IMG/VR virus record: IMGVR_UViG_3300029922_000001
Span: 372,001-436,000 of that record
Strand: one strand, 5' to 3'
Length of the DNA stretch: 64,000 bases
Each line of letters starts with the position of its first letter. Within the stretch, counting starts at the first letter, position 1. Below, in pieces: positions 476 to 63,901 of the stretch. Position numbers and translations under genes: made by a program. A model generated the notes under the pieces. The model was not told the origin of the DNA. It ran no database searches and was given only the letters and a program-made list of their open reading frames with translations.

Positions 476-913
476 ATGAAACAAGTACCTGATTATATTC
501 AAATTAAAAGAATCTATATTCGTTCTGCTTCTGCTGGTGTATTCAATAGACTAGCAGAATTGACTGAAGATGGTGGTTCTATGATTGATTGGCTGAATGG
601 CGCAAGAAATGGTTGTAAGAACTATATTAGTTACATGGCAATAGATACAAGGGTCAATAAAATCGTTGGCTGGGTTTGTGTAACTTCTATTTCTGATTGG
701 CATCTTTATAATGGGGAAAATAAAATTGGAACTTTCATTGATCGTGATTACCGAAGACGAGGAATTGGTTCTGCATTGGTTAGACAAGTTCAGACTAAAG
801 AAAAGAGTTTTATTTATTGGAAAGGTGAATACGATGCAAGAAATTTTTATAAGGAAAACGTGCCTAATTCAATATATTACAACAACCTATGGAATCAGGT
901 AAATCCCCAATAA
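476..913 (+). CDS. GNAT-family acetyltransferase (paralog 1)
   Basis: Acetyl-CoA motif A: IGTFIDRDYRRRGIGSALV. Confidence 0.85.
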   Translation: MKQVPDYIQIKRIYIRSASAGVFNRLAELTEDGGSMIDWLNGARNGCKNYISYMAIDTRVNKIVGWVCVTSISDWHLYNGENKIGTFIDRDYRRRGIGSALVRQVQTKEKSFIYWKGEYDARNFYKENVPNSIYYNNLWNQVNPQ

Positions 914-1096
914 GGGATTTCGAGGTATATTCTATTTATGAATGGAACCTGATGGTAATCACTATTTTAAGAATTGGTACAAGCTAACTGATAAAGGTGC
1001 TGCTATTGTATCACATTGGCTTGATCTAAAATATGATGCTAACCATATTAATTGCGGTCATCTACCTTCAAAATTAGTTCCTTTCGGATGGTTGGC

Positions 1097-1306
1097 ATGA
1101 AGTCTAAACCAATTAAAAAAGAAAAGTACATTCCAGTAATAAAGCAATGCGCTGACTGTGGTGTTGATGTAGAATTTACAGAGTATCAATTGATGTCTAG
1201 TGCAATCATGGATGATGAAACAATGTGCAATAAGTGCAGAGATGAATGGCGTATTAAAACTGGTTGGACTCCAGGCTCAACACGATATCGAAGAAAAGGT
1301 CAATAA
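1097..1306 (+). CDS. small Zn-ribbon protein
   Basis: CADC...CNKC; ATG at 1097 preferred to the track start. Confidence 0.55.
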   Translation: MKSKPIKKEKYIPVIKQCADCGVDVEFTEYQLMSSAIMDDETMCNKCRDEWRIKTGWTPGSTRYRRKGQ

Positions 1307-1488
1307 TGAACAAGAAAATCACACTTAGACAATTGACGGAAAAATATCCAGAATATCTGGATGTTCCTATTTTTATTTATAAACGGGAAGGGACACCTTA
1401 TGGTTATATAAAAGTAAATGATTTATCTATTAGATTTAATGATGATATTAACGATAAATATATTAAAGGAATTGTTATTTCCGTATAA
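1306..1488 (+). CDS. hypothetical protein
   Basis: ATG overlaps upstream stop (TAATG). Confidence 0.55.
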   Translation: MNKKITLRQLTEKYPEYLDVPIFIYKREGTPYGYIKVNDLSIRFNDDINDKYIKGIVISV

Positions 1489-1524
1489 ATCCCCAATAGG
1501 GGGAATTAAGGTATACTTACGACC

Positions 1525-1854
1525 ATGAATTGGCAAGAAAAATTTCAAAAACTGTCTAGTATAAAAATCATCAATGATAAGTTGTGGTTCTCAATTATGT
1601 GGAGCGATTTCACCAAATGTTGGTATGTATCCAATAACCCTACTATTGATCTATTTGTTGAAATGGATGGTGGCATTGTTACTTTTGCTTGCCACGAAAA
1701 AGCTATTGAAGATGCTGTAAATAAATATTGGGACATTTTCACAACTCATGAAGTCACTGTAGAGTGGCGTAATCCATCAAGTAAGAAAACACACCATATG
1801 GGTGAAATCAACTATATTAATAATGAATTTGTCGTTACAAGAAGAGGTAAATAA
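1525..1854 (+). CDS. hypothetical protein
   Basis: Leaderless start behind class-B promoter. Confidence 0.75.
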   Translation: MNWQEKFQKLSSIKIINDKLWFSIMWSDFTKCWYVSNNPTIDLFVEMDGGIVTFACHEKAIEDAVNKYWDIFTTHEVTVEWRNPSSKKTHHMGEINYINNEFVVTRRGK

Positions 1855-2288
1855 TGCAAGTTGCTCCTGATTATATCGTTATCAAAAGAATGTATGCTGA
1901 AACAATGGCTAATAACATCTATGATAAACTACTTACTCTTACAAATTACTATGGCACTATGGCTGAATGGCTCATACAGGCACGTAAAGGTGGGAAAGAC
2001 TATATTATCTATGTTGCCTTTGATAAGCGTCAGAATCAACCTGTAGGCTGGATTATGTCTACTAATATTCCTGATTCTCATTTGTATAATGGTGAAAATA
2101 AGATTGGAACTTATGTCAATGAATATTATCGAAGACAGGGTATTGGAGCTAAACTAGTAGAAGCAATGAAAAAGGTTAATCAAGAGTTTCTTTTCTGGAG
2201 AGGTAACAATCAAGCTGACAGTTTTTATGGTGCAACTATTCAGAAATCCACTGAATTTAATTATAGTTGGTCTAAGGTGAATGGTTAA
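1854..2288 (+). CDS. GNAT-family acetyltransferase (paralog 2)
   Basis: IGTYVNEYYRRQGIGAKLV; N-terminus PDYIVIKR shared with paralogs 1 and 3. Confidence 0.85.
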   Translation: MQVAPDYIVIKRMYAETMANNIYDKLLTLTNYYGTMAEWLIQARKGGKDYIIYVAFDKRQNQPVGWIMSTNIPDSHLYNGENKIGTYVNEYYRRQGIGAKLVEAMKKVNQEFLFWRGNNQADSFYGATIQKSTEFNYSWSKVNG

Positions 2289-2490
2289 TATGGAAGATTT
2301 TACACCTGATCAAATAAGAAGATTGTCAAACATTATGAGCGATTTGGCTATTTCAGCAAGACAAATGCAAGATGATAGCACCGATGATTTTGCTAAAGGT
2401 TATCAAGCTTGTGCTGATTTTGCGAATAGACGATTGGCAAAACTAAATTCTGAATTAGACAGTCTTAAAGATTTACTTGGCGTCTCATAA
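2281..2490 (+). CDS. hypothetical protein
   Basis: 69-aa ORF, coupled to upstream gene. Confidence 0.6.
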   Translation: MVNMEDFTPDQIRRLSNIMSDLAISARQMQDDSTDDFAKGYQACADFANRRLAKLNSELDSLKDLLGVS

Positions 2491-2526
2491 ATCCCCAACA
2501 TACAAAAAATAGGTATACTATCATTC

Positions 2527-2973
2527 ATGGCACAAAAGGCACCAGATTATATTAAGATTAAACGCATGTACATCAATCAGATTTCACAAAATCGAAAGTT
2601 GGAATATACACTACTCAGTTTGACGCATGGACCCTGTGCATCTATGCATCAATGGTATACCGCTCTAAAGCGAAATAAGAGTGATAATTACATTATCTAT
2701 GTTGCATTTGATACAAGAATTAATGAAGCGGTTGGTTGGTCTATGGTATCAGATGTTTCTGATGACTGGCTTAGTAATGGACAGAAGAAGATTGGAACCT
2801 ATGTTGGTATTCTGTATCGGCGTCAGGGTATTGGTGCAAGACTTGTTAAGGCTGTTAAGCGAATTGATAAGGATTGGGTTTTTTTCAAATACAATCAAGG
2901 TGCTAAGGCTTTTTATGCTGATACCATTAAGAAGTCTACTGATTACAATTACGCTTGGGGAGCAGTGAAATAA
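2527..2973 (+). CDS. GNAT-family acetyltransferase (paralog 3)
   Basis: IGTYVGILYRRQGIGARLV; leaderless behind class-B promoter. Confidence 0.85.
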   Translation: MAQKAPDYIKIKRMYINQISQNRKLEYTLLSLTHGPCASMHQWYTALKRNKSDNYIIYVAFDTRINEAVGWSMVSDVSDDWLSNGQKKIGTYVGILYRRQGIGARLVKAVKRIDKDWVFFKYNQGAKAFYADTIKKSTDYNYAWGAVK

Positions 2974-16139: not shown

Positions 16140-16203
16140 ATCCCCAATAGGAGAATTAGAGGTATACTCTAGACAACACAATCAGGAAAATCTTCAAGAA
16201 AGC

Positions 16204-16232
16204 TTGACAAAAGACTTCAAGATAGGTATAAT
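16204..16232 (+). promoter_or_regulatory. consensus sigma70-type promoter
   Basis: TTGACA-17-TATAAT; no ORF downstream. Confidence 0.85.
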
Positions 16233-16256
16233 GAATGAGTAAGAAAGAAAGCAAGC

Positions 16257-16520
16257 GCCCGATAGCTTGGGTTAACGCAGACTTAACAAGTAGATGTCTA
16301 TATTGATTCACTCATTGCGCAATGAGAAGAATAACGGGACACGCTGAATGGAAAATAGATAACTGAGATTAACACAGTTATTTATAAAGAAGACAGTAGC
16401 ATAAAGAGAAAGCAAGTGAGGCTTAGAGTACGTAATGTTAATCACCCTCTAAGATAATGAGTAAGTAACGTAGTGGTGTTTGGTGAGTTTGATGTGTAGG
16501 TTCGATGCCTACATCGGGCT
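16257..16520 (+). ncRNA. tRNA-shaped RNA with ~190-nt insert in the anticodon arm
   Basis: Acceptor GCCCGAT/ATCGGGC; T-arm GTAGG-TTCGATG-CCTAC; stem AGACTTA/TGAGTTT followed by 5-nt GATGT. Confidence 0.7.
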
Positions 16521-16524
16521 CGCG

Positions 16525-17220
16525 TTAAATATGTCTATTGTAAATATTTTTAATTAAATTGTTTACAATAGACCAATATTCATCTTTATGAGATTGAGTT
16601 AAGTGTTTGCATTTAGATGAATCTATAGTACAAAATTCTATTCCATTTTCATTACATAAAATAGATTTTTGTTTGTCATTATTTTGAATTTTATTCAATT
16701 TATCTTGCCCGTAAATTGGTTCATAATGGAAAATACCATTAAGTTCAATAGCTAATTTCAGTGTTGGAAAATAAAAGTCTAATTCTGAATCAATCGCCTT
16801 ATGTTTATTGTATTCACAATTCAACTCTGGGTAATGTAATTGTATTTGTTCTTCAAGATAAACCTCTAATTTAGATCGTCTATTGCCATGTGTTTTGTTT
16901 TTATTGTTGTAGGTGGTGGCGCAACTATGATTACAGAAAAATCTTCCAGTATTTGATTTTTTTATTGCTCCTAATCTTACTGTTATTTTTTTACTACAAC
17001 ATGAACATTCTTTAGGAACTCTATATTTTATACTTTTTTGTGATGTCATGCACCTTGTAGAACAATAAAGTGGTTGATTTCTTTTAAGAGTTTTATTTAT
17101 TTGAGATTTCTTTCTTATAAAATATAAATTACAAGCATAACAAATTAATTCAATTTGAGGATCACCTTTAAATTGATTTAAATATTCTATTGATATATTA
17201 TTAGATAATGGAGTGTTCAT
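16525..17220 (-). CDS. Vsr/DUF559-like endonuclease with Cys-rich Zn-binding N-terminus (free-standing homing-type)
   Basis: ELDFYFPTLKLAIELNGIFHY; multiple CxxC/CxxxC motifs; the only large minus-strand gene. Confidence 0.75.
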   Translation of the reverse strand: MNTPLSNNISIEYLNQFKGDPQIELICYACNLYFIRKKSQINKTLKRNQPLYCSTRCMTSQKSIKYRVPKECSCCSKKITVRLGAIKKSNTGRFFCNHSCATTYNNKNKTHGNRRSKLEVYLEEQIQLHYPELNCEYNKHKAIDSELDFYFPTLKLAIELNGIFHYEPIYGQDKLNKIQNNDKQKSILCNENGIEFCTIDSSKCKHLTQSHKDEYWSIVNNLIKNIYNRHI

Positions 17221-17263
17221 AAATCTATCTTCTTAAAATAATCGAAGATTCCTTTTCGATTCC

Positions 17264-17292
17264 TTGACAGAGTATGAAAAACGAGGTATAAT
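17264..17292 (+). promoter_or_regulatory. consensus sigma70-type promoter
   Basis: TTGACA-17-TATAAT, driving the non-coding block up to 17913. Confidence 0.85.
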
Positions 17293-17483
17293 ACATCCAT
17301 AAGCCAACGAGATAAATATGGTCAAGTTCCGAAATGGGAACCGGAAAGGCTAATTGCATTACCTTCATCGGGTACGAGACGGATATATATACTACGTTGA
17401 TGGTAGGATGAAATTTATTTCATGAATTAGGCTGAACTCCTAATGTATATAATAGGAAAGCTGAAATAATCTTTCCTGCGCAC

Positions 17484-17582
17484 GAGAAAGAAAGCTATAA
17501 GTGGTACATAGAAAGCGCAGAAGTTTCTCTTTAAATTCAATAGAAAAAGAAGAGTGTATAGGTTCGATTCCTATCTTTCTCA
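17484..17582 (+). ncRNA. degenerate tRNA-like element
   Basis: Acceptor GAGAAAG/CTTTCTC; D-arm CTAT-AAGTGGTAC-ATAG; T-arm ATAGG-TTCGATT-CCTAT; no 7-nt anticodon loop. Confidence 0.6.
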
Positions 17583-17591
17583 CGAGAAAAT

Positions 17592-17680
17592 GGGCGTTTG
17601 CCGAAGTTGGTTAACGGCAGTTCCACTATGACATAAAGTTGTAGTGGAGCTGATCAGGGGTTCGAGTCCTCTAGCGCCCA
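17592..17680 (+). ncRNA. tRNA-like RNA with 13-bp extended anticodon stem and 5-nt loop
   Basis: GGGCGTT/AGCGCCC; D-loop AAGTTGGTTAA; GTTCCACTATGAC-ATAAA-GTTGTAGTGGAGC; T-arm AGGGG-TTCGAGT-CCTCT. Confidence 0.75.
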
Positions 17681-17750
17681 CTCCGAGTTGTAACGATGTC
17701 GTAAACCTGTTTAAATGGTAACATACTGGAACGATTTAACGGACAATTCC

Positions 17751-17913
17751 GAGAGGGAAGAATATATAAGCAGTTAGTTAATGGTTATAATAGCATAAAG
17801 TAAGCATGAAGCAATTCATGGGTGAAAGCAGTAGTGAGTTAGAGTCTCAATTATATATTTGTTTAGTAAAGTAGAATTTTAATACAGATTAGTTCGAACC
17901 TACCCTCTCTCCA
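17751..17913 (+). ncRNA. tRNA-like RNA with encoded CCA and expanded D region
   Basis: GAGAGGG/CCCTCTC-T-CCA; TTCGAAC loop; internal stem GAATATATAA/TTATATATTT. Confidence 0.55.
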
Positions 17914-25153: not shown

Positions 25154-26047
25154 ATGAAAAATAATTCAAAGATACGTGGTATCATAAAATCCGAAGGGGA
25201 TCAAGCCCCTTATCAAGTAAAGGGTTTCCCTACTAGTTACAGCAATCACATTCCAGGTGCTAATGTTTTAGCGACGATGAAAGATATAGAAGTATGGTAT
25301 CATTTCATTCGTTGGTATGATCATCCAAATGGTCAAATTGCTTTACAATACTTAGTTCAAAAGTATGATCGTTTTTTTCACAAGACTGCTCACAAGTTAA
25401 GTCATTCTAATCCCCATGAATTTGAGTATGCGGATTTCGTAGGTTTTGCAAGTCAGGGATTTTTATATGCTCTTTTAACTTACGATTTCGAAACAGGAAT
25501 TGAGAAGGGTAGTAGTTTAAACACATGGATTCATAGCAACGCTTATCCATTTGCAAACAACCAGCGTTATTCAGCCAGGATGGTAAGTTCCAATTCTCAT
25601 TTACGTCAAGACATTAAATATGCTGCTGGTGGTTATGATAGTGATCCTGAGAAGAAAGAGTTATTTGAGCGTCAGCGCAATTGGGTAAATGACAGTGACA
25701 TTGCATTAGCTTTACAGCGTGTAAAGTTATTAGATTCTCCAGCTATGTTTTCTGATTTAATGGATAATGATGATGAAGAGTCCCATGAATTATTAATTGA
25801 AGATCCAAACGTTTTAAATGAGGAACAATTAACATTGCGGATTTTGATTAATAACATGAAAGAAACATTTTCAGATGTTGAGCGTAAGATATTCGAATAT
25901 CATTTTGAGCAAGAGATGAATGCTCAAGAGGTAGCATCAGAGTTATCTTTAGATTATCGCAAGACATTAAATTTGATTCGCAAGATCAAAGAGAAGAGTG
26001 TTGCATATTACAATCAGAGTGAACAAGAGTTAGCATTGGTTGTATAA
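25154..26047 (+). CDS. RNA polymerase sigma factor (group 3-like, divergent)
   Basis: Region 2-like YLVQKY...D.VG.ASQGFLYAL.TYDFE.G...TWI; region 4 HTH FSDVERKIF...EMNAQEVASELSL. Confidence 0.75.
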   Translation: MKNNSKIRGIIKSEGDQAPYQVKGFPTSYSNHIPGANVLATMKDIEVWYHFIRWYDHPNGQIALQYLVQKYDRFFHKTAHKLSHSNPHEFEYADFVGFASQGFLYALLTYDFETGIEKGSSLNTWIHSNAYPFANNQRYSARMVSSNSHLRQDIKYAAGGYDSDPEKKELFERQRNWVNDSDIALALQRVKLLDSPAMFSDLMDNDDEESHELLIEDPNVLNEEQLTLRILINNMKETFSDVERKIFEYHFEQEMNAQEVASELSLDYRKTLNLIRKIKEKSVAYYNQSEQELALVV

Positions 26048-28371: not shown

Positions 28372-28491
28372 CTAATTTTTACAATTGGTTACGTATCGTG
28401 CATCTTTAAGTAAAATAGCAGTAGATCCTACCACATTAGATGGTTCCAATAGATCATAGAGTCTCTGAAGTTTTTTTAGTTGTTCGTTCAT
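28372..28491 (-). CDS. 39-aa micro-protein behind the only minus-strand class-B promoter
   Basis: MNEQLKKLQRLYDLLEPS...; ATG 6 nt after TATACT (promoter 28498-28528, minus strand). Confidence 0.6.
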   Translation of the reverse strand: MNEQLKKLQRLYDLLEPSNVVGSTAILLKDARYVTNCKN

Positions 28492-28549
28492 GATATAAGT
28501 ATACCTTAATTTTGAGTGTTGGGGATTTTTAAAAAAGTCAATAAAAGTA

Positions 28550-35310: not shown

Positions 35311-35442
35311 GGGAAAGTCTCAGCGTTGAGATCTCCTTTATTTTCCCTATTTCCTTGGATGGTGTTTATCTATACACTAATTAATTGAATTATTCGAACA
35401 ATTCGAAATCCCCAATAGAAGAAATTGAGGTATACTCTGATC

Positions 35443-36405
35443 ATGAAAACAAAAACATTTTCTCGTGAAATTAGTTTAATTAAAGCAGCTAATGAAGTTT
35501 ATTCTTTATGTGATAGCTACGGTATTAAAAAAGGATGTTTAGGTGCTTTTGATAAAAACATTAAGCCTTTTGGTTTAAAGAGAGAAGATCTTAAAGAAAT
35601 TTTGAAATATGTTTCTATTCAAAACAAAATTAGAACAAATAGATATAATTTAAGTTTAAAGATAAATTCTAAAAAACAGGGATATACTTTAGTTCCAAAT
35701 ATAGTTAAGAAACTTAATGATTTAAAAATTAGGACTATTAGTTATAATGTTAAAAATGTTCTTAGAACATCTAATCTAAAAATTGTATTATCTAATAACC
35801 CAAATAAGTTTAATGCAACTCATACTTCTACTACTGATTATGGTGGAAGATACCCAGAGACAACACATTATAACACTATTACAGTACCTAGTAATTGGCG
35901 ACTAAGAGTGGATAAGTTAGGAATTAGTAATTTAGGTAACATGTTTACATTAGACGCTTTTCCTTGTGAAACCAAAGGTGATTTTAAATTATATTCTGCA
36001 ATGTGGATTTCTCAAGGTCGTGGTTATAATTTAAATGTCCATAAAGGTTTTATTGCGGTAAAAGACAATGAATCATGTCATGCATTGACATCTAGTTCTG
36101 CTATTTCTGGATTAAAAAGAAAATTATCTTTAACTAAAGAAGAAAAATTAGCAATGGGATTAAAACTTATTAATTCATCGTTGTCAAAAAAAGTAAAACA
36201 AAATAATCATCTTTATGTTACTCTTCAAGATGCTTATACTGTAGGTTCCTGTGATAGCGGAATTAGATCATGGTGTAATCATGTGGGTTTAAATTATTAT
36301 GATGGTAAAGCGCCGATTGAATTAGTTATGAAAGGTTATGAATTAGCACCATTATCAGAAGTTAGAAGAACACTTTTATATACACTTAGAAATTCTCCCC
36401 AATAG
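35443..36405 (+). CDS. hypothetical basic protein
   Basis: 320 aa; leaderless; ends NSPQ*. Confidence 0.8.
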   Translation: MKTKTFSREISLIKAANEVYSLCDSYGIKKGCLGAFDKNIKPFGLKREDLKEILKYVSIQNKIRTNRYNLSLKINSKKQGYTLVPNIVKKLNDLKIRTISYNVKNVLRTSNLKIVLSNNPNKFNATHTSTTDYGGRYPETTHYNTITVPSNWRLRVDKLGISNLGNMFTLDAFPCETKGDFKLYSAMWISQGRGYNLNVHKGFIAVKDNESCHALTSSSAISGLKRKLSLTKEEKLAMGLKLINSSLSKKVKQNNHLYVTLQDAYTVGSCDSGIRSWCNHVGLNYYDGKAPIELVMKGYELAPLSEVRRTLLYTLRNSPQ

Positions 36406-36429
36406 AAGAAATTGAGGTATACTCGAAAC

Positions 36430-39963: not shown

Positions 39964-40010
39964 ATTCTAAGAAAATCCCCAACAATGGGGATTCGAGGTA
40001 TATTAATTTT

Positions 40011-40271
40011 ATGAAGAATTCTAAAGTGATTGATTATTTACTATGTTTGTTTGATGGATATCAACATTGGGGAAGAAATCACGAAAAAGATAAATCCGAT
40101 AATAAAATTACTGTTATTCAATTTTATTATCCAAGTACATTTGATAAGTTAATGAATTCTTTATCTAATGGCATTGAAGATGGTGGTCAAATAATTAATA
40201 TTACAGATGAAATTATTGAATTACAACGTTCAGAAGATTTAATCACTATGACTGTTCAGGGTTGGATTTAA
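40011..40271 (+). CDS. hypothetical protein
   Basis: Leaderless behind class-B variant (TATATT). Confidence 0.7.
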   Translation: MKNSKVIDYLLCLFDGYQHWGRNHEKDKSDNKITVIQFYYPSTFDKLMNSLSNGIEDGGQIINITDEIIELQRSEDLITMTVQGWI

Positions 40272-40308
40272 AAATCCCCAATAGAAAAATTCGAGGTATA
40301 TTTATTTT

Positions 40309-41311: not shown

Positions 41312-41603
41312 AGCTTTTTATTGAGAACCATCTACTCTATTAGTGTATAGATAAAAGGTTTCCCCGAAAATGGGGAAACCTCCGAAATCCCAGCATTGAT
41401 AAGTCAATTACTCACAGCTAAAGCAGTGGGCTTGTTTTTGGTCGTGATAGGGGTTGCAGTCAGCACCATGACAATATTAGTATTGGGTTGGGTTGTAGGC
41501 ATTGGGGTATTATTATTATTGTTTGCTATGGTTAACTGGTTTGTCAACATCTGTTGTCCACGTAAAATCCCCAATAGGTGAATTGAGGGTATACTAGAAA
41601 CTT

Positions 41604-41676
41604 GTCCCGGTAGCTCAGTGGATAGAGCAACAGCCTTCTAAGCTGTGGGTCGCAGGTTCGAATCCTGTTCGGGACG
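41604..41676 (+). tRNA. trnR: tRNA-Arg(UCU)
   Basis: Complete cloverleaf GTCCCGG...ACAGC-CTTCTAA-GCTGT...GCAGG-TTCGAAT-CCTGT-TCGGGAC-G; CCA not encoded. Confidence 0.95.
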
Positions 41677-41700
41677 CGAGATTTATGGTATAATAACATC

Positions 41701-41943: not shown

Positions 41944-41977
41944 TCCCCAATAAAAAAATAACAGGTATACTCTGATC

Positions 41978-46607: not shown

Positions 46608-47036
46608 ATGCTAGATGAAGCATTTTATTCAGCTTTCACAAGAAAAAAACTATTTAGCAGTTATATTAAAATAGGAGATTATTCTTTTCAAGAAGGTGCT
46701 GATCTAGTGTTAAACAAAACACGATTGGAGTTTACCTATCGTATGGGGAAAAATCCTTATAACGTAGTATTCCAAGCTAAGAAACTATCACGTACAGGCA
46801 AAAGACTACTAATATCTCATCCCTATTGCAAACATTGTGGAATAGAGGGTGTTAAGTGGGGATTAGAAGCTAAAAAATACCATGTTCAAATGATTCTGTA
46901 TTCTGAGAACAATGTACCTCTAACCATTGATCATATTCTACCCAGATCAAAAGGTGGTTCTGATAGTCCAAAGAATTATCAAGTGCTATGTTATGCTTGT
47001 AATCAACGTAAAGCTGACTTTGAAAATCCCCAATAA
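46608..47036 (+). CDS. HNH endonuclease
   Basis: CKHCG...[30 protein letters not shown]. Confidence 0.9.
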
Positions 47037-47060
47037 AGAAATTTGAGGTATACTCTTATC

Positions 47061-47483
47061 ATGGAAAACGCACAACTTTTTGCACAACGAGCTTATGGAT
47101 ATGTCGGCAAGCAAACAGATCGTCCTAATAGTATAACTGATGAATGTGTAACTATTAATATTAATCATCAGGTAATAAAACGCCTTATTTGTATATTACG
47201 TGATCATCCAAAGTATTCTATGACTGATAGATATTCTGAGTTTATCAGTGATATGATTGATAAAATCATTATGAATAAAACAACATTAAAAGGACTTTAT
47301 ATACCCAAAGTTACAAAATCATTTTTTGTTATATCTCCAAATGGTGAAATTATTATAGTTAGCAATCAATCGAAATTTTGTAAAGATAACAATTTAGACT
47401 CAACAAGTTTTAGTAGAATGCTTAACGGTAAAAGAAAATCATCTCAAGGTTGGACTAAATATATCCCCAATAAAGAAATTTAA
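47061..47483 (+). CDS. protein with NUMOD1-like HTH tail
   Basis: VISPNGE...SKFCKDNNLD...SRMLNGKRK..QGW. Confidence 0.55.
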   Translation: MENAQLFAQRAYGYVGKQTDRPNSITDECVTININHQVIKRLICILRDHPKYSMTDRYSEFISDMIDKIIMNKTTLKGLYIPKVTKSFFVISPNGEIIIVSNQSKFCKDNNLDSTSFSRMLNGKRKSSQGWTKYIPNKEI

Positions 47484-47497
47484 GGTATACTCTGATC

Positions 47498-47758
47498 ATG
47501 AAAGTAAGAGCTAATTCGAGTTATATTTATCACCCTTGTCTTTTGGATGTTTGCGATGGTAGAACAGACCTAGTAAAAGGTGATCTTGTGGTAGTTAAGA
47601 ATCTACCAGGTTGTCCTAAGTGTAATATAATGAATCATGCACACGTCTATAAAGATGATAAATTTGCTGGTCTAGTTTGTTGCGCTTCATTGTATTCTCC
47701 AAAGGAATACCCTAAGTTGCTTGCCGAATGGGAAGCAAGGAATGCACAAAATGCTTAA
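47498..47758 (+). CDS. hypothetical protein
   Basis: Leaderless behind class-B promoter. Confidence 0.7.
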   Translation: MKVRANSSYIYHPCLLDVCDGRTDLVKGDLVVVKNLPGCPKCNIMNHAHVYKDDKFAGLVCCASLYSPKEYPKLLAEWEARNAQNA

Positions 47759-50339: not shown

Positions 50340-50774
50340 ATGAGAACGGATTTACCAGATTTTTCTAATATTTTATGGATACCAATTGAAGATATTTTTA
50401 ATTCATGGTTATCAATTGATAGTTCTAAAATTAAGTTAGGTCCGCAAGAACGAACCTATGAAGAGTGGATGAACTTACTTAATTATAAAAGAAAAAATAG
50501 GGGATATGAAACAGTTTTACCTTTGTTGACTGAAACAGGTTTTCTTCGTCCTTTAGCTTTCCGAACATACAATAAAAATTTATATTTACCTAATGGTCAT
50601 CATCGTTTAACAGCGGCGTATGATTTGGGTTACAAGTATATACCATTTGTTGAAGCTGTAGATGGACAATCAGCATACTATGATATACATGAATTTGAAG
50701 ATTCAGAATTGTGGTCTTTGATTCATCCTGAAAATCCATTGCCTACAAATCCAAAAATCCAAAAACCCCAATAG
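50340..50774 (+). CDS. ParB/Srx-like paralog A
   Basis: WIPIEDI...GFLRPL...NGHHRLTAAYDLGYKYIP. Confidence 0.75.
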   Translation: MRTDLPDFSNILWIPIEDIFNSWLSIDSSKIKLGPQERTYEEWMNLLNYKRKNRGYETVLPLLTETGFLRPLAFRTYNKNLYLPNGHHRLTAAYDLGYKYIPFVEAVDGQSAYYDIHEFEDSELWSLIHPENPLPTNPKIQKPQ

Positions 50775-50798: not shown

Positions 50799-51086
50799 AT
50801 GATAATCGGTCAACGACTTACAGATTTTCGGAAAGACTATGAAAATCCTAATATTGTAGATTTTCTATGGGAAAATCGAAAACATTTTCTCACAAACAAC
50901 TCAATAGATACTAGTGATCAATGGGGTTTGGTTACAAAGATTGAAGGACCATATTCTTCACCAATCTACAATGAATCTGTAAAGTACAAATATGTAAAAG
51001 AAGCACTATCGGATCAGGGTATCATCATGGAATTTATCCGTCATAATGGCAAACTTCGATTCACAATTTCCCCAACACTCGAATAA
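50799..51086 (+). CDS. hypothetical protein
   Basis: Leaderless behind class-B promoter. Confidence 0.7.
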   Translation: MIIGQRLTDFRKDYENPNIVDFLWENRKHFLTNNSIDTSDQWGLVTKIEGPYSSPIYNESVKYKYVKEALSDQGIIMEFIRHNGKLRFTISPTLE

Positions 51087-51102
51087 GAGGTATACTCAGA
51101 TC

Positions 51103-51609
51103 ATGCCACGCGGAAGAAAACCACTAGATTTCACTTTTATGTCTTACCAGGATGCTAAAGTTTATGTTCGAAAGAACGGTATCCGAAGTCTCGCCCAATG
51201 GCAGGACTTTTGCAGTAAGAACAAACGACCTGACAATATCCCTGCCGCTCCCAATATTAAGTATAAGGACGAATGGGAAGGCTTTCCTGAGTTTCTAGGC
51301 TATACTGCCAGTGGTCGCGGACGACCAGCAGGTAGCGTAAATCGTCCTAAAGAAGAAAGGGATCAAGATAAAGAAAGTACCAATATCTTCGAAGATCGCC
51401 CAATTAATACAGTAATGTATACTTACGAAGAGGCTAAGGCATGGTGCTATAAGTTGCGCTACACTAAGGCTATGTACAAGAAGTTCATTACTGATTACAC
51501 CTATCAGGTTCCAGGTTCTTGCAGTTCCAGACTTCCTAAGAATCCTTCGGAGTTCTATCCTGAATTTGATGCAAATGACTTCTATTACACTGAAGGGGAT
51601 AATGTCTAA
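51103..51609 (+). CDS. putative DNA-binding protein, paralog of 28665-29147
   Basis: RGRKPL.F.SY.DAK.YV...RPDNIPAAP...W.GFPEFLGYTASGRGRP; second degenerate unit. Confidence 0.75.
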   Translation: MPRGRKPLDFTFMSYQDAKVYVRKNGIRSLAQWQDFCSKNKRPDNIPAAPNIKYKDEWEGFPEFLGYTASGRGRPAGSVNRPKEERDQDKESTNIFEDRPINTVMYTYEEAKAWCYKLRYTKAMYKKFITDYTYQVPGSCSSRLPKNPSEFYPEFDANDFYYTEGDNV

Positions 51610-53295: not shown

Positions 53296-53309
53296 GCCAC
53301 AATCTAACG

Positions 53310-53347
53310 AAATGAGACTGAGGGAATAATCTCTCAGTCTCATTTTT
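53310..53347 (+). terminator. intrinsic terminator
   Basis: AATGAGACTGAG/CTCAGTCTCATT plus T tract. Confidence 0.85.
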
Positions 53348-57521: not shown

Positions 57522-57926
57522 ATGAAGTCTCGAAAGAAAATTCATTGGATATCAATTACGGAAATTTTAAGCACTTGGGGAAGTTGTGATAGCGAATGTG
57601 CTGGAGAAAACTACCCTGACAATAAGATGCTTACTGAATCAGAATGGCAAGTACTTCTAGATTACAAACGTAAAGAACTTAAATATAAAGAACTCTATGA
57701 GATTATTAAAAAAGAGGGTTTTAATGAGCCACTTGTCTTTTGCAATAATTGGGGAAGAATACTCCATCTAGATGGTCATCATCGTTTAACTGTTGCTATT
57801 GATTTAGGATATAAATACATTCCCTATATCAAACGATCTAAAGTAAAAGATATTTGGGTGGATTTTTATGAGGATTTTAGTCACTTTAATTTTGCTCATC
57901 CTGAAAATCCCCAACCAATAAATTAA
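57522..57926 (+). CDS. ParB/Srx-like paralog B
   Basis: WISITEI...EGFNEPL...DGHHRLTVAIDLGYKYIP. Confidence 0.75.
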   Translation: MKSRKKIHWISITEILSTWGSCDSECAGENYPDNKMLTESEWQVLLDYKRKELKYKELYEIIKKEGFNEPLVFCNNWGRILHLDGHHRLTVAIDLGYKYIPYIKRSKVKDIWVDFYEDFSHFNFAHPENPQPIN

Positions 57927-58275: not shown

Positions 58276-58686
58276 ATGTCAAGGTTAATTGAACGAATAG
58301 AGTGGATTTCCATCGAAGATATTACCGAAAATGGTTGGGGTAGTGTTGATAGTAAAGAAATTGATATTGATTTTCAAAGATACATTATGCTTAACGAAAG
58401 AGAATGGAAACAACTTCTTGACTTGAAGCGGGAAGATAAAAAGTACCCCAAACTTCTAGCTAGTGTTAAGGCAAATGGCTTATTAGTGCCAGGTAATTAC
58501 ATTATCCACGAGGGAATGTATTTTCACGGCAATGGTCATCACCGCCTAGCGGCGGCAATTGATTTAGGTTTCAAAAGACTACCTTATATTCAAGTACCAG
58601 GACCTAGACAACTTGCATGGCATTGGAGTAAGAAGATGTTTGAAAAAGCAAATTTAATGGAATATGCTCATGGATTTCCCCAATGA
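58276..58686 (+). CDS. ParB/Srx-like paralog C
   Basis: WISIEDI...NGHHRLAAAIDLGFKRLP. Confidence 0.75.
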   Translation: MSRLIERIEWISIEDITENGWGSVDSKEIDIDFQRYIMLNEREWKQLLDLKREDKKYPKLLASVKANGLLVPGNYIIHEGMYFHGNGHHRLAAAIDLGFKRLPYIQVPGPRQLAWHWSKKMFEKANLMEYAHGFPQ

Positions 58687-58995: not shown

Positions 58996-59028
58996 GAAAG
59001 GGTACCCGATGGTACCCTTTCTCTATTT
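58996..59028 (+). terminator. intrinsic terminator
   Basis: GAAAGGGTACC-CGAT-GGTACCCTTTC. Confidence 0.8.
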
Positions 59029-59924: not shown

Positions 59925-59951
59925 AACCGGAGAGAATCCGGTTTTCTTTTT
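59925..59951 (+). terminator. intrinsic terminator
   Basis: AACCGG-AGAGAAT-CCGGTT plus T tract. Confidence 0.75.
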
Positions 59952-60066
59952 GCTTCCACGATTCATAATTCCTATATATTAGTGTATAGATGCATAGGAA
60001 TTATGAAAATGGGGAAATAATGATCAGTAAAAATCCCCAATGATCAAAAATGAGGTATACTAAGAT

Positions 60067-60468
60067 CGTACAAGACGGTAAGGTGGCTGAAAGGAAATCC
60101 CCAAAAGTCTATAAACTAATTTAGAATTGAATACATATAGTAACTTTCAGGGTGTGCGGTGACGGGTTAAAATCGTACACACCTTTCAATGTACACGATA
60201 AATCTTTGTGGCTCAACGAATAAGATGCAGTGAGAGTTTTATCCCGTTTTAGAATCTACCCTAGTGAATAAGGTCAAAATCCCCAATGAGATGGCAAATC
60301 TCCCAGATAAGGTAATCCATGTATATCCATGATATGATCGTTGACCACGTATCGTCTAAATGTGTAAAGAACTGATGAAGATCCTTTAGCCCATTTATGG
60401 GTTATAAATAGAAAGGTAATGAGGGTTGTTGTGCGGCTTAAATCGTATAGTCAGCCCTTTAACTTTTT
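60067..60468 (+). ncRNA. candidate ~400-nt structured non-coding RNA
   Basis: Class-B promoter with no ORF behind it; several hairpins; 5'/3' complementarity; terminator-like 3' hairpin 60421-60468. Confidence 0.65.
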
Positions 60469-60503
60469 ATCCCCAATAAAAGAATTACAGGTATACTCCA
60501 ATT

Positions 60504-60692: not shown

Positions 60693-60920
60693 GAATCCCC
60701 AATAGGGGAATTAAGGTATACTCTAAATGTGATGAATAGTTATCATCCAAAAAGATAAGGGTTTAAGTTTATTTTTGCAAAAGCTGTACGTTGGTTAGTA
60801 ACCAATAAAAGAATATTCTAATAACTAAAGAAGAAAGATTGATAGAGTAGCGTCTATTAAAATAAATGTATATCCTTATCACATTTTCCCCAACACTCAA
60901 ATTAGAGGTATACTATATCC

Positions 60921-62313: not shown

Positions 62314-62337
62314 AAAAATTAGAGGTATACTCTAAAT

Positions 62338-62571
62338 ATGAACATTCTAAAGAAGATTCTCAAAGCTATTGGATGTAAACAATCTACGCTTTGTAAATTT
62401 GGTTATCATACACTAGCTTGGTATTCAAAAGCTGATTGTGAAATGTATTTCATTCAGAAGCGCAAATTTGGTCCTTTAGTAGAGTGCGGTTGTTGTCGTA
62501 AGATTTTACATATTGAAGAAGTTAACGTTGATGAGGTTGAGTATCTTCATGGATTATATCCAATAAATTAA
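62338..62571 (+). CDS. hypothetical protein
   Basis: Leaderless behind class-B promoter. Confidence 0.65.
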   Translation: MNILKKILKAIGCKQSTLCKFGYHTLAWYSKADCEMYFIQKRKFGPLVECGCCRKILHIEEVNVDEVEYLHGLYPIN

Positions 62572-62611
62572 GAATTATCCCCAATAGGAATTTTAAAGGT
62601 ATACTCTAAAC

Positions 62612-62977
62612 ATGAAAGTTTTAATATCTGATGATGACCAAAATCTTTTAGATAGTATGGTTCGCTATTTAGAGCGTTATGATATCGAAGTACATGGTTT
62701 TCTTTACAATGATCTTGCTATGAATGATCTTGAGGCAGGTTTTACACCTGACTTCATTTTGACAGATTATGACTATGGTTGCGGACGACGAAATGGAGTA
62801 GATTATATTAAAGCACTTAGGTCAAAACATTTTACTGTACCTATCGCTTTAGTTTCAGGTTCAAGTAAACAACAATTAATGAAGGAAATCGAAGGTATTG
62901 ACAATGTTGTTGTAATTGAAAAATCAATGAATTTATGTAAAATGATTTTTAGGTTTCTTAATTTAAATCCCCAATAG
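62612..62977 (+). CDS. stand-alone response-regulator receiver (CheY-like)
   Basis: VLISDDD; ILTD phospho-site; VSG; IEK. Confidence 0.85.
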   Translation: MKVLISDDDQNLLDSMVRYLERYDIEVHGFLYNDLAMNDLEAGFTPDFILTDYDYGCGRRNGVDYIKALRSKHFTVPIALVSGSSKQQLMKEIEGIDNVVVIEKSMNLCKMIFRFLNLNPQ

Positions 62978-63001
62978 GAATTTTAGAGGTATACTCTAAA
63001 C

Positions 63002-63202
63002 ATGATTAAAAAGACTCTTCGACAAGGATTCATTGTTGACAAGCACGGTGTTCAACGATGGTATAAGGATGATTTTATGCATAATCTTAATGGTCCTGCG
63101 GCTGTTTTCCCTGATGGTAGGGTAGCTTACTACATTAACGGTACACGAATTCCACGTAAGACGTTCGGACAAATGCTGGCTAAAGCAAGGAAAAAGAAGT
63201 AA
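63002..63202 (+). CDS. MORN-variant-like small protein
   Basis: RWYK...HNLNGPAAVFPDG..AYYING. Confidence 0.65.
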   Translation: MIKKTLRQGFIVDKHGVQRWYKDDFMHNLNGPAAVFPDGRVAYYINGTRIPRKTFGQMLAKARKKK

Positions 63203-63429
63203 TGCCAGAAACCCCACCGCCAATTACAAGTATGCAACTTCAAGCTTTTTGCTTACTATTTCAACAATCTCTTACTTAATGTATTGGGGAACAAATTCGA
63301 AACAAGATACTTGTTTTCTTGTTCTTACTATTGCATTTTTGGTGTTGGGTCTAAGTGTACTTATGTGCAAATACCTGATACCACCAGACTAGTTTTCCCC
63401 AATAAGAAAATCGAAGGTATACTCTTTTC

Positions 63430-63864
63430 ATGGCTAATTTTCCTACTCTGCAAGACGTGCATTGGGTTTCAATTGAAGAGATTTTAAACTCTTGGCTTTC
63501 AATTGATAGTAAAGCACTTAAAACATCTACGGACATTTCAAAAGAGTTGACCTATAAAGAATGGGAGATACTACTTACAAGAAAACGTGAAGAGTGTGAA
63601 TATGAAGAGATTAGACCTATCATTGAACAAGAGGGGTTTAGAATGCCTTTGGTTTACGAAATTCAAGATCGAACTGGAAAATTCTGTCATTGTCAGGGAC
63701 ATCATAGACTAGCTTGTGCAATAGATTTAGGATATAAATATTTGCCATACGTTCATTATCAATGGGCTGATGGTGGTTGTTGGCACATTGCTGATTTTGA
63801 GTGGGATACATTAATCCATCCTGAAAATCCCCTGCCTACTAATCCAATTTTGACTGATAAATAA
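63430..63864 (+). CDS. ParB/Srx-like paralog D
   Basis: WVSIEEI...QGHHRLACAIDLGYKYLP; tail LIHPENPLPTNP shared with paralog A. Confidence 0.75.
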   Translation: MANFPTLQDVHWVSIEEILNSWLSIDSKALKTSTDISKELTYKEWEILLTRKREECEYEEIRPIIEQEGFRMPLVYEIQDRTGKFCHCQGHHRLACAIDLGYKYLPYVHYQWADGGCWHIADFEWDTLIHPENPLPTNPILTDK

Positions 63865-63901
63865 AAATCCCCAATGGGGAAAACCGAGGTATACTTAGAA
63901 C

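What the first reader, a model, noticed from the sequence alone, without database searches (positions are those of the whole stretch)
901..63894. Genome-scale array of promoter-gene cassettes built on one fixed element, CCCCAA-N13-GGTATACT
Seen: about 75 copies (hand count) with an invariant 13-nt spacer, almost always at gene junctions, so most small genes have their own copy. The -10 (TATACT with upstream GG) is sigma70-like, but the -35/-30 zone holds TCCCCAA instead of TTGACA. Separate TTGACA/TTGCTT promoters in the window mostly pair with TATAAT. Known analogies: T4 middle promoters (MotA box plus host -10) and the PeSL regulatory cassettes of T4-type hyperplastic regions. Inference: the element is both a phage-specific promoter class and a recombination unit, turning the accessory genome into an integron-like shuffling array with no recognisable integrase in the window.
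Basis: partly seen in the sequence, partly recalled or inferred. Interest (0 to 1): 0.85.

Follow-up and report, generated by a model that had tools for sequence, protein, structure and literature searches.

The report
Leaderless promoter-gene cassette array, huge phage
A 521-kb peat-bog phage carries more than 110 copies of one private promoter, each placed so that transcription should begin on the gene's own ATG, and these copies are also the points where small genes are gained and lost between related phages.

Summary
CCCCAA-N13-GGTATACT occurs 64 times exactly in the window against 0 expected, and 77 times with near variants. The spacer is fixed and 63 of the 64 copies lie on one strand.

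The array runs beyond the window. There are 114 exact copies over about 90 kb of a 521,591-bp phage genome, and none was found elsewhere in it.

The element looks like a two-block sigma70-family promoter: TAnnnT is kept, 17 bp separate ATCCCC from TATACT, and it also precedes a tRNA and non-coding stretches.

- The start codon sits exactly 6 nt after TATACT in 95 of 114 copies, with pyrimidine then purine at the predicted -1/+1. The genes are therefore predicted to be leaderless.
- The window encodes a divergent sigma factor (25154-26044), the best candidate reader of the box.
- The whole module is conserved in relatives whose rIIA is only 57% and 51% identical.

Cassette gain and loss at the element is supported. 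One 1,162-bp indel between samples and five indels against a 93%-identical relative have both breakpoints inside promoter copies, leaving a chimeric promoter. This resembles the PeSL cassettes of T4-type phages, not an integron.

No transcription start site data exist, and the host is unknown.

The parts
905..63895 (+). The part of the promoter-cassette array inside the window: 63 exact + strand copies of CCCCAA-N13-GGTATACT and 13 near variants. The full module is about 45 bp: A-rich lead, ATCCCCAA, 13 nt, GGTATACT, 5 nt plus a pyrimidine, then ATG.
   Evidence: Starts of the exact copies (first C): 1491, 2493, 2975, 9333, 10882, 11613, 15006, 16142, 20671, 21051, 28629, 30693, 32437, 32662, 33084, 33743, 34792, 35016, 35410, 36397, 36684, 37697, 40538, 41569, 41945, 42108, 43261, 44367, 45257, 45527, 45788, 46575, 47028, 47465, 48750, 49732, 50307, 50766, 51070, 51797, 52153, 52495, 52789, 53861, 54375, 55743, 56340, 56945, 57158, 57909, 58243, 58678, 59511, 60035, 60471, 60888, 61161, 61583, 62305, 62579, 62969, 63397, 63869. 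Near variants start at 905, 6083, 10322, 12703, 17923, 30332, 32136, 39977 (N14), 40276, 48228, 59031, 60697 (N12), 61963.
47465..47500 (+). A typical copy: box, 13-nt spacer, GGTATACT, CTGATC, then the ATG of an 86-aa ORF (47498-47758).
28372..28524 (-). The only minus-strand copy (28524 down to 28498). It also has ATG six nt after TATACT, opening a 39-codon ORF.
41569..41677 (+). A copy whose TATACT ends 8 nt before the mature 5' end of tRNA-Arg(TCT) (41604-41677). This argues that the element is a promoter and not a translation signal.
16142..16168 (+). A copy followed by a non-coding stretch, with a purine at position 7 after TATACT. Copies at 60035-60061 and 60697-60722 behave the same way.
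25154..26047 (+). Gene for a divergent sigma70-family sigma factor (297 aa, regions 2 and 4), the candidate reader of the promoter class. It lies in an operon without any CCCCAA copy, downstream of a 460-nt AT-rich non-coding region (23200-23660).
   Evidence: ESM Atlas score 0.98 to viral Sigma70_r2/r4 clusters. Profile against PDB finds FliA, sigma B, sigma F and SigA, E down to 4e-16. 21 to 24 of 41 remote homologues carry Pfam Sigma70_r2/r4. All top Foldseek hits are sigma factors. PHROG phrog_351, E 2.8e-11. The ortholog in the relative L063 is 72% identical and JGI names it 'specialized sigma subunit'.
16204..16232 (+). Perfect host-type promoter TTGACA-N17-TATAAT, with GG before the -10. 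A second perfect one lies at 17264-17292. Near-consensus ones start at 6580, 19013 and 28550.
35410..36423 (+). A cassette (320-aa ORF 35443-36405) flanked by two copies with identical spacers. It is absent from relative L061, where a single copy stands in its place.
39977..40302 (+). A cassette (86-aa ORF 40011-40271) between two TATATT-type copies. It is absent from L061 and L062, with 23 nt of shared promoter at the junction.
47028..47491 (+). A cassette (140-aa ORF 47061-47483) between two copies that agree at 12 of 13 spacer positions. It is absent from L061 and L062, with a 41-nt overlap at the junction.
41945..41971 (+). A single copy that in L061 is duplicated around an extra 140-aa cassette. 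The copy at 43261-43287 likewise borders an extra 110-aa cassette in L061.
59925..59950 (+). One of the few intrinsic terminators on the + strand. Others lie at 53309-53346 and 58996-59021. Most cassettes have none.

Best explanation
The element is a compact promoter module, repeated at least 114 times in one orientation over about 90 kb of a 521.6-kb phage genome. Each copy is a two-block sigma70-family promoter. It has a -10 element GGTATACT and, 17 bp upstream of the TATACT hexamer, a box ATCCCC(AA) in place of the host-type TTGACA. The copy is placed so that the RNA should start on the A of the gene's own ATG (6 nt after TATACT), which would give leaderless mRNAs for about a hundred small accessory genes. 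Genes inside operons in the same region use ordinary Shine-Dalgarno sites. The box is most likely read by the phage's own sigma factor, encoded at 25154-26044, riding on host core RNA polymerase. That would make this a phage-controlled, probably delayed-early or middle, class. Because the about 40-bp module is repeated at nearly every gene junction, it also serves as homology for recombination. Crossovers between two copies delete, insert or swap whole promoter-plus-gene cassettes and leave one intact, chimeric promoter. Shown here: the repeat, its geometry, its conservation in relatives, the sigma gene and the breakpoint structure. Inferred: promoter activity, the start site, leaderless translation, and which factor reads the box.
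For: Repeat and geometry: 64 exact copies against 0 expected, with a fixed spacer. There are 114 exact copies in the array and 1 on the other strand.

Promoter character:
- Variants keep T, A and the last T of the hexamer (TATAAT, TATATT, TACACT, TAGAAT).
- The same GG-TATAMT pairs with perfect TTGACA at 17 bp in five other promoters.
- The element also precedes tRNA-Arg and non-coding stretches.

Start site:
- ATG or GTG sits at positions 7-9 after TATACT in 95 of 114 copies.
- Position 6 is a pyrimidine in 112 and position 7 a purine in 111, including copies with no start codon there.
- A pyrimidine at -1 occurs in 55 of 62 coupled genes against 30 of 65 other ATG genes, p = 2e-7.
- TANNNT beginning 12 nt before the start codon is the published in-silico signature of leaderless genes (PMC3160421).
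- Orthologs in relatives align from residue 1 at these ATGs.
- Operon-internal genes have GAGG or AGGAG 4-9 nt upstream, whereas the GAGGT inside the module is 11 nt away and present in only about half the copies.

Conservation: the same box, spacer, -10 and N6-ATG occur in relatives with rIIA 97%, 57% and 51% identical, one of them at 46.5% GC. None was found in 185,579 species genomes.

Sigma factor. Its ortholog in L063 is 72% identical, more conserved than rIIA at 57%. A relative whose sigma is only 43% identical keeps GGTATACT-N6-ATG but has no CCCCAA box.

Recombination:
- A 1,162-bp, three-cassette indel separates assemblies of different samples. Both ends are promoter copies, and the short form carries the left copy's spacer joined to the right copy's N6 and gene.
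- It was seen in k=127 and k=141 assemblies although the exact repeat is only 12 nt.
- Against L061, five indels have both breakpoints inside copies, one lies at a copy's edge, and two replacements begin 7-21 nt after the coupled ATG.
- Five of the eight spacer-identical pairs are immediate neighbours that flank non-paralogous genes.
Against: - There are no 5'-end data. The one metatranscriptome contig that maps (51078-51228) begins inside a copy, upstream of the predicted start. It is either read-through RNA or DNA carry-over and does not support a start at 51103.
- Few cassettes have terminators. Most genes should therefore also lie on read-through transcripts, where the ATG is internal and leaderless initiation cannot apply.
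- The assignment of the box to the sigma factor rests on co-occurrence only. The sigma could instead serve a late class elsewhere in the genome, of which only about 20% was seen.
- The host is unknown, so it is not known how well it translates leaderless mRNA.
- Since nearly every gene junction here carries a copy, breakpoints at gene junctions would coincide with copies by position alone. The case for recombination inside the element rests on junction structure, not on position.
- Three of eleven junctions against L061, and a 51-bp in-frame indel, are unrelated to the element.
Confidence: 0.68

Rival explanations
1. Sigma appropriation, as at T4 middle promoters. The host primary sigma reads GGTATACT, and a phage activator bound to the CCCCAA box at about -30 replaces the -35 contact. 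The window's sigma factor serves another class.
For: The same GG-TATAMT -10 is used with a perfect host-type TTGACA in five promoters of the window, so the -10 may belong to the host sigma. The relative L066 keeps the -10 and the N6-ATG but lacks the box although it has the sigma ortholog, so box and sigma can be uncoupled. The box lies where the MotA box lies (my own knowledge of T4).
Against: No MotA, AsiA or other activator family appeared among the listed family matches of 142 window proteins. However, only 25 of 29 Pfam families and 25 of 68 PHROG families were listed, and most of the genome was not seen. A bipartite-promoter sigma with region 4 is encoded in the array and is conserved with the box in L063.
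Confidence: 0.22
2. The element acts at the RNA level rather than as a promoter. It would be a conserved intercistronic translation or processing signal on long polycistronic transcripts, with GAGGU as a Shine-Dalgarno site and the CCCC/GGGG hairpin as a processing or attenuation site.
For: GAGGT is present in about half the copies. About 20 of 114 copies can form a CCCC/GGGG hairpin against 5% expected. Few terminators exist, so read-through RNA must exist. The one RNA contig spans a copy.
Against: The GAGGT-to-ATG distance is 11 nt, against 4-9 nt at the real Shine-Dalgarno sites of this phage, and the other half of the copies have AAGG, CAGG or TAGG. The element precedes a tRNA and non-coding stretches. 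The conservation pattern follows the TAnnnT rule of -10 elements and a pyrimidine-purine step at positions 6-7. Most copies cannot form the hairpin.
Confidence: 0.05
3. An integron-like site-specific cassette system, in which the element is an attachment site for a dedicated recombinase.
For: Cassette indels are bounded by the element.
Against: No integrase or other recombinase family appeared among the listed family matches of 142 window proteins. The element has no attC-like imperfect inverted repeat in most copies. Each cassette carries its own promoter. The crossover point varies within the shared sequence, and junction overlaps range from 12 to 48 nt, as expected for homology-driven exchange.
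Confidence: 0.03
4. The copies are merely a young repeat family, from recent tandem duplications or a small selfish repeat, with no regulatory role.
For: Neighbouring copies often have identical spacers.
Against: The genes next to identical copies are not paralogs. The element, its orientation and its N6-ATG phase are conserved in phages that differ by about half of their rIIA residues and by 11 points of GC. Only the functional positions are invariant, while the spacer varies.
Confidence: 0.02

Closest known systems
PeSL (promoter-early stem-loop) cassettes of T4-type phages (Arbiol et al. 2010, PMC2839356; Comeau et al. 2014, PMC4122927)
   Same: A short conserved promoter module stands in front of most ORFan genes of a hyperplastic region. 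Indels and replacements between close relatives have their junctions in the module. Flanking modules collapse to a single chimeric one when a gene is lost. The upstream gene's stop codon lies within or next to the module. A C-run/G-run stem-loop between the two promoter blocks is present in a subset here.
   Different: PeSLs are host sigma70-consensus early promoters with a terminator stem-loop, followed by a Shine-Dalgarno site and the start codon. Here the -35 position holds a non-host box, only about 18% of copies have the stem-loop, there is no U-tract, and the start codon is fused to the predicted start site with no leader. The copy number (114-128) and density (one per about 420 bp) are higher. 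The phage is not a T4-type virus as far as the window shows (rIIA 27-36% identical to T4-group proteins). Mini-circles were not tested.
T4 middle promoters (MotA box at -30 plus a host -10; MotA/AsiA sigma appropriation)
   Same: A host-like -10 hexamer is combined with a phage-specific box where the -35 would be. Many copies stand in front of early or middle type genes such as rIIA, rIIB and the RNA ligases.
   Different: The box sequence is unrelated (ATCCCCAA, not TGCTT). No MotA or AsiA homologue was found in the window. A full-length sigma factor is encoded instead. T4 middle transcripts have leaders with Shine-Dalgarno sites.
Promoter classes read by phage-encoded sigma factors (for example SPO1 gp28 middle promoters; from my own knowledge)
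   Same: A phage sigma70-family factor with regions 2 and 4 is encoded among early genes. There is a bipartite promoter with a private -35 and many copies in one genome region.
   Different: The -10 here is close to the host consensus instead of being private. The link between sigma and promoter is only inferred. The promoters are fused to start codons.
Leaderless gene architecture of Deinococcus and Actinobacteria, and single phage cases such as lambda cI from PRM (PMC4007540, PMC3160421; the lambda case is from my own knowledge)
   Same: TAnnnT begins 12 nt before the start codon. ATG is almost exclusive (61 of 62 coupled genes in the window). No Shine-Dalgarno site lies at working distance.
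   Different: Those are scattered host genes read by the housekeeping sigma, or single phage genes. Here about 100 genes of one phage region share one private promoter in one fixed phase. Mapped jumbo phages differ: phiKZ showed no leaderless transcript (PMC8244752) and AR9 has 26-491 nt leaders (PMC5312081).
Integron cassette arrays
   Same: A one-directional array of small, mostly unknown genes, with cassette-wise gain and loss.
   Different: No integrase and no attC. Each cassette has its own promoter, whereas integron cassettes share one. The junctions indicate homologous exchange.

Membership tests
sigma70-family bipartite promoter | -10 hexamer TAnnnT with invariant T, A and final T | tested here: met
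   All 80 GGTATACT copies, and the variants TATAAT, TATATT, TACACT and TAGAAT, keep these three positions.
sigma70-family bipartite promoter | An upstream block at 16-18 bp from the -10 hexamer | tested here: met
   ATCCCC lies 17 bp from TATACT in 63 + 1 copies. One copy has 16 bp and one has 18 bp.
sigma70-family bipartite promoter | Transcription starts 6-8 nt after the hexamer, usually at a purine after a pyrimidine | not testable with these tools
   The sequence signature is present (pyrimidine in 112 of 114 copies at position 6, purine in 111 of 114 at position 7). No 5'-end data exist, and the one RNA contig is uninformative.
Leaderless genes (criterion of Zheng et al. 2011, PMC3160421) | A TANNNT signal beginning about 12 nt upstream of the translation start, with no Shine-Dalgarno site at working distance | tested here: met
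   95 of 114 copies have ATG or GTG exactly 6 nt after the hexamer. GAGGT, when present, is 11 nt away, against 4-9 nt at real sites.
PeSL | Host sigma70-consensus early promoter (-35 and -10) | tested here: not met
   The -35 position holds ATCCCC. Only five separate promoters in the window have TTGACA.
PeSL | A stable stem-loop acting as terminator or attenuator in each module | tested here: not met
   A fold of -5 kcal/mol or lower occurs in 20 of 114 copies (5% expected), with no U-tract. Only three clear + strand terminators lie in 20 kb.
PeSL | Shine-Dalgarno site and start codon at the 3' end of the module | tested here: not met
   The start codon is present but fused to the predicted start site, with no Shine-Dalgarno site at working distance.
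PeSL | Indel and replacement junctions between close relatives fall in the module, leaving a chimeric module | tested here: met
   The 1,162-bp indel between samples, and five of eleven junctions against L061 with both ends in copies.
PeSL | Excised mini-circles carrying one module plus a gene | not testable with these tools
   This needs outward-facing PCR or long reads. The Logan k=31 'deletion' contig is probably a graph artefact, because assemblies at larger k keep the gene.
T4 middle (MotA-dependent) promoter | MotA box (TGCTT core) centred at -30 | tested here: not met
   The box is ATCCCCAA.
T4 middle (MotA-dependent) promoter | MotA and AsiA encoded by the phage | tested here: inconclusive
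   None appeared among the listed Pfam and PHROG families for 142 window proteins, nor in ten candidates scanned at E up to 1. About 80% of the genome was not examined.
Integron | IntI tyrosine recombinase next to the array | tested here: inconclusive
   No recombinase family among the listed matches in the window or the flanks seen. The rest of the genome was not seen.
Integron | attC sites and promoterless cassettes driven by one common promoter | tested here: not met
   Each cassette has its own promoter, and no attC-like structure is present.
sigma70-family sigma factor (protein 25154-26044) | Regions 2 and 4 detectable by profile and by fold | tested here: met
   Profile against PDB: sigma B, FliA, sigma F and SigA at E 4e-16 to 1e-8, covering both regions. 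All top Foldseek hits are sigma factors. PHROG sigma factor family, E 2.8e-11. Pfam on the protein alone gives only a sub-threshold region 4 hit, E 0.12.

The most novel reading that the evidence does not exclude
The phage runs a private expression channel for its accessory genome. Its own sigma factor starts more than 100 transcripts exactly on their AUGs. These genes would then be translated by the leaderless (70S, Shine-Dalgarno-independent) route while the phage shuts down or remodels host, Shine-Dalgarno-dependent translation. The array also encodes a weak bL12-like protein. The same 45-bp module carries everything a new gene needs: a stop for the upstream gene, a promoter, and the start site with the start codon. 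Any ORF dropped between two copies is therefore expressed at once, which would explain the very high cassette turnover.
Probability: 0.2. Interest if true: 0.9.

Novelty: new variant of a known kind. Interest (0 to 1): 0.7.

Why it matters
If the predicted start sites hold, this would be the largest set of leaderless genes I know of in any phage, all driven by a single promoter class. In the held literature, the mapped jumbo phages phiKZ and AR9 have leaders on all mapped transcripts. The array would give a natural and very regular system for three questions: how a phage sigma factor (or activator) re-targets host polymerase, how leaderless translation is used during infection, and how a minimal promoter-plus-start module makes newly acquired genes expressible at once. 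The indel data also extend the PeSL idea beyond T4-type phages and beyond host-type promoters. In that idea, regulatory repeats act as the seams of phage accessory genomes. Here there is population-level evidence from several peat samples. On the practical side, the IMG/VR entry for this virus (441 kb) is truncated at one of these repeats, and the real genome is 521.6 kb.

Tried and rejected
- Near-identity DNA search of GenBank phages found only tRNA-Arg matches, so no described close relative exists.
- Rfam at gathering scores found only the two tRNAs.
- A strict-motif scan of 185,579 species genomes gave 0 hits, so the element is neither a host promoter type nor a prophage element in that set.
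- RNA evidence: only one metatranscriptome run holds any of the region. Its single 151-nt contig starts inside a copy, so it is uninformative.
- The 294-bp 'deletion' between the identical copies at 52495 and 52789, seen in a Logan contig, was rejected as evidence. The exact repeat (33 nt) exceeds that assembler's word size (31), and seven other assemblies keep the gene.
- Tandem duplication as the source of neighbouring identical promoters was rejected, because the adjacent genes are not paralogs.
- Shine-Dalgarno function of the GAGGT inside the module was rejected as its main role, on spacing and on its absence from half the copies.
- ParB-like paralogs (50340, 57522, 58276, 63430) and the receiver-domain protein (62612-62977) were considered as box binders. 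Nothing links them to the box.
- Host inference from a nucleoside hydrolase gave mixed taxa, and cluster look-ups gave no names.
- rIIA-based search of IMG/VR returned only the window's own contig.

Full report
**Source.** The window is positions 372001-436000 of IMG/VR contig IMGVR_UViG_3300029922_000001 (441,498 bp), from a peat metagenome. That contig is incomplete. It ends on the last base of a GGTATACT, where the assembly graph forks. A MEGAHIT assembly of another sample holds the same virus as one 521,591-bp contig. GC content is 32-38%. The window encodes rIIA, rIIB, RNA ligases 1 and 2, NrdG, a RuvB-like ATPase, NUDIX, GNAT and ParB-like paralogs, HNH endonucleases and two tRNAs. No GenBank phage is close. 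DNA matches are limited to the tRNA-Arg, and rIIA is 27-36% identical to T4-group proteins.

CCCCAA-N13-GGTATACT occurs 64 times exactly (63 on +, 1 on -) against 0.00 expected. The spacer is 13 in every exact copy, and one further copy has a spacer of 12. Thirteen near variants bring the window total to 77. The aligned copies give a longer consensus: an A-rich lead, ATCCCCAA, usually T-A, a purine-rich spacer, R-GGTATACT, five variable bases, a pyrimidine, then ATG.

**Extent of the array.** I joined the window to its flanks from the other assemblies. The array then runs from window coordinate -7927 to 82061, with 114 exact and 128 loose copies on + and 1 on -. Density rises from 3-4 per 10 kb on the left to 23-24 per 10 kb on the right. 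The array stops where gene orientation flips. Strict-pattern scans of IMG/VR and the JGI metagenomes found no copy elsewhere on these contigs. The array is therefore a region of about 90 kb, 17% of the genome, and not the whole genome.

**Why it is a promoter.**
- The hexamer varies only where sigma70-type -10 elements tolerate change. TATAAT, TATATT, TACACT and TAGAAT occur, while T, A and the last T are constant.
- ATCCCC lies 17 bp from the hexamer, the optimal -35 to -10 distance.
- Five other promoters in the window pair the same GG-TATAMT with TTGACA at 16-17 bp, two of them perfect consensus.
- The element stands 8 nt before the mature 5' end of tRNA-Arg, and before at least three stretches with no ORF. 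A translation signal would have no role there.
- Intrinsic terminators are rare: three clear ones on + in 20 kb.

**The new point: fixed phase with the start codon.** Of the 114 exact copies, 91 have ATG and 4 have GTG at positions 7-9 after TATACT. Position 6 is a pyrimidine in 112 copies and position 7 a purine in 111 (A in 103). This includes the copies where the ORF starts 3 nt later or where there is no ORF. A pyrimidine-purine step 7 nt after the -10 is the usual start-site signature. TANNNT beginning 12 nt before the start codon is the published signature of leaderless genes (PMC3160421).
- Coupled genes have a pyrimidine at -1 in 55 of 62 cases, against 30 of 65 for other ATG genes (p = 2e-7).
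- Coupled genes use ATG in 61 of 62 cases.
- Operon-internal genes of the same region have normal GAGG, AGGAG or GGAGG sites 4-9 nt upstream. The GAGGT formed by the module lies 11 nt away and is present in about half the copies.
- Orthologous proteins in distant relatives align from residue 1 at these ATGs.
- The single minus-strand copy also has N6-ATG and a 39-codon ORF.
- Other promoters of the region, with TATAAT and with or without the box, show the same coupling at N5-N7.

I therefore predict that about a hundred genes of this phage are made from leaderless mRNAs. This is inference. The one RNA contig available begins upstream of the predicted start and shows nothing either way.

**Who reads the box.** The 297-aa protein at 25154-26044 is a divergent sigma70-family factor. 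Pfam on the single sequence gives only a sub-threshold region 4 hit, but five other lines agree:
- The ESM Atlas places it at 0.98 with viral clusters carrying Sigma70_r2 and r4.
- PHROGs gives a sigma factor family at E 2.8e-11.
- A five-sequence profile finds FliA, sigma B and sigma H in the PDB. A 41-sequence profile finds sigma B, FliA, sigma F and SigA at E 4e-16 and below, over both regions.
- 21 to 24 of the 41 remote homologues carry Pfam Sigma70_r2 or r4.
- The AlphaFold model (pLDDT 69.6) finds only sigma factors at the top of a Foldseek search.

Its gene lies in an operon with no CCCCAA copy, behind a 460-nt AT-rich non-coding region. This would fit a cascade, though it is not proof of one.

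The ortholog in relative L063 is 72% identical, where rIIA is 57% identical, and L063 uses the same box. A more distant lineage (L066, sigma 43% identical) keeps GGTATACT-N6-ATG, but none of its 12 promoters has the box. Its predicted region 4 recognition helix differs at several positions (alignment). That could be co-variation between sigma and box, or it could mean the box is read by something else.

From memory, the closest solved relatives (sigma B, sigma F, sigma 28) read promoters whose -10 begins with G-rich bases (GGGTAT, GCCGATAA) 12-15 bp after a short -35. CCCCAA-N12-RGGTAT has the same geometry. This is a lead, not a test. The T4-style alternative, host sigma plus a box-binding activator, stays open at about one chance in four.

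**Recombination.** Two independent comparisons show cassette gain and loss with junctions inside the element.

First, between samples. The long form has a 1,162-bp segment with three copies, two small ORFs and a short non-coding cassette. It is seen in the 521-kb contig and two other assemblies. The short form, seen in three other samples, lacks the segment. Both forms occur in the sample that gave the fork. The short form's single promoter has the spacer of the left copy and the N6 and gene of the right copy, with the crossover inside the shared 12 nt AAGAGGTATACT. These assemblies used words of 127-141 nt, so a 12-nt repeat cannot have caused an artefact.

Second, against L061 and L062 (rIIA 97%, DNA about 93% identical, from different metagenomes). 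In 15 kb there are eleven junctions:
- Five are presence or absence of one cassette with both breakpoints inside copies, with 23-48 nt overlaps. The window copies involved are 35410/36397, 39977/40276 and 47028/47465, and the duplications lie around 41945 and 43261.
- One lies at the upstream edge of a copy.
- Two are replacements that begin 7-21 nt after the coupled ATG.
- Three are unrelated: a GIY-YIG homing endonuclease, a 145-bp indel and a divergent patch.

In the 57% relative L063, ORFs without a window homologue carry their own copy in 13 of 21 cases, against 6 of 19 for shared genes. Five of the eight spacer-identical copy pairs in the window are immediate neighbours, and the genes they flank are not paralogs. 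This fits recent exchange or conversion and not gene duplication.

Caveat: nearly every junction here carries a copy, so position alone proves little. The argument rests on the chimeric single promoters. A 51-bp in-frame indel, and the Logan 'deletion' that I reject as an artefact, show that not every difference involves the element.

**Module design.** The upstream gene usually ends within or just before the box (median gap 3 nt). In 72 of 114 copies a stop codon directly follows CCCCAA, so several upstream proteins end in Pro-Gln. About 20 copies can fold a CCCC/GGGG hairpin between box and -10, against 5% expected. This resembles the stem-loops of PeSLs but is not general here.

**Comparison with known systems.** In evolutionary behaviour the array works like the PeSL cassettes of T4-type phages (PMC2839356, PMC4122927). 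It fails three of their defining features: host-consensus promoter, terminator stem-loop, and Shine-Dalgarno leader. It resembles T4 middle promoters in layout but not in sequence or, so far, in factors. It is not an integron. In the literature I could search, mapped jumbo phages have leaders on their transcripts (phiKZ none leaderless, PMC8244752; AR9 26-491 nt, PMC5312081). I found no description of a phage with a serial leaderless promoter array.

**Verdict.** The promoter-class and recombination-unit readings are supported, and 'integron-like' and 'genome-scale' are not. The added findings are the leaderless phase, the sigma factor, conservation across a clade and the true genome size. It is a new variant of known kinds and of real interest, pending start-site mapping.

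Noticed in passing
window 16161-17950: A roughly 1.8-kb mostly non-coding stretch. It is driven by one CCCCAA copy and two perfect TTGACA-N17-TATAAT promoters (16204, 17264). It holds tRNA-Ser (17592-17681) and three further tRNA-like T-arm/acceptor ends (about 16499-16525, 17556-17586 and 17890-17915) that ARAGORN and Rfam do not call. An HNH homing endonuclease gene lies on the opposite strand (16528-17220; PHROG E 3e-13). These could be tRNA or other RNA genes interrupted by introns or by the endonuclease.
   Followed up: partly
window 60062-60470 and 60723-60890: Two promoter copies are followed by about 400 nt and 170 nt without an ORF. They are candidate phage non-coding RNAs and have no Rfam match.
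   Followed up: no
L007 end / L022 / L025 (window coordinate about 69498): The 441,498-bp IMG/VR 'genome' ends on the last base of a promoter copy, because two cassette variants coexist in that sample. The genome continues into a 78-kb contig and totals 521,591 bp in another assembly.
   Followed up: yes
L055 9339-9647 (genome about 453,970-454,280): A 102-aa ORF inside the array has a weak Pfam match to ribosomal protein L7/L12. This could matter for translation control, but it is a weak hit and was not confirmed.
   Followed up: no
window 62612-62977: A stand-alone response-regulator receiver domain (121 aa; Pfam E 2e-9), expressed from its own promoter copy.
   Followed up: no
window 50340-50774, 57522-57926, 58276-58686, 63430-63864: Four paralogous small ParB/Srx-like 'DNA binding' proteins (PHROG 21912). 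Other paralog families are the probable GNAT acetyltransferases at 19634-22085 and an unnamed three-member family at 476-2973.
   Followed up: partly
window 23200-23660: A 460-nt AT-rich non-coding region with several TATAAA-type motifs, directly upstream of the operon that holds nrdG and the sigma gene. It may be another promoter class or an origin. Just before it (23085-23135), a 9-nt unit is repeated five times inside an ORF.
   Followed up: no
L061 9596-10270 (between the orthologs of window 43294-43509 and 43528-44229): A GIY-YIG homing endonuclease gene on the opposite strand is present in the close relative and absent from the window. It is an insertion unrelated to the promoter element.
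   Followed up: partly
window 34825-35310: This 161-codon ORF looks like two genes read together. Residues 1-61 match one small protein of the relative L063 and residues 80-161 match another. A promoter copy (35016) lies between the two parts.
   Followed up: partly
window 30693-30770 versus L063 3697-3709: RNA ligase 1 has a 50-nt leader after its promoter copy in this phage, but the ATG sits at N6 (leaderless phase) in both relatives. The coupling can therefore be gained or lost for the same gene.
   Followed up: partly
L065 (Logan ERR10034876 contig, 13.1 kb): A relative with 46.5% GC, against 35% here, keeps the same box, spacer, -10 and N6-ATG. The constraint on the element is therefore independent of base composition.
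   Followed up: partly
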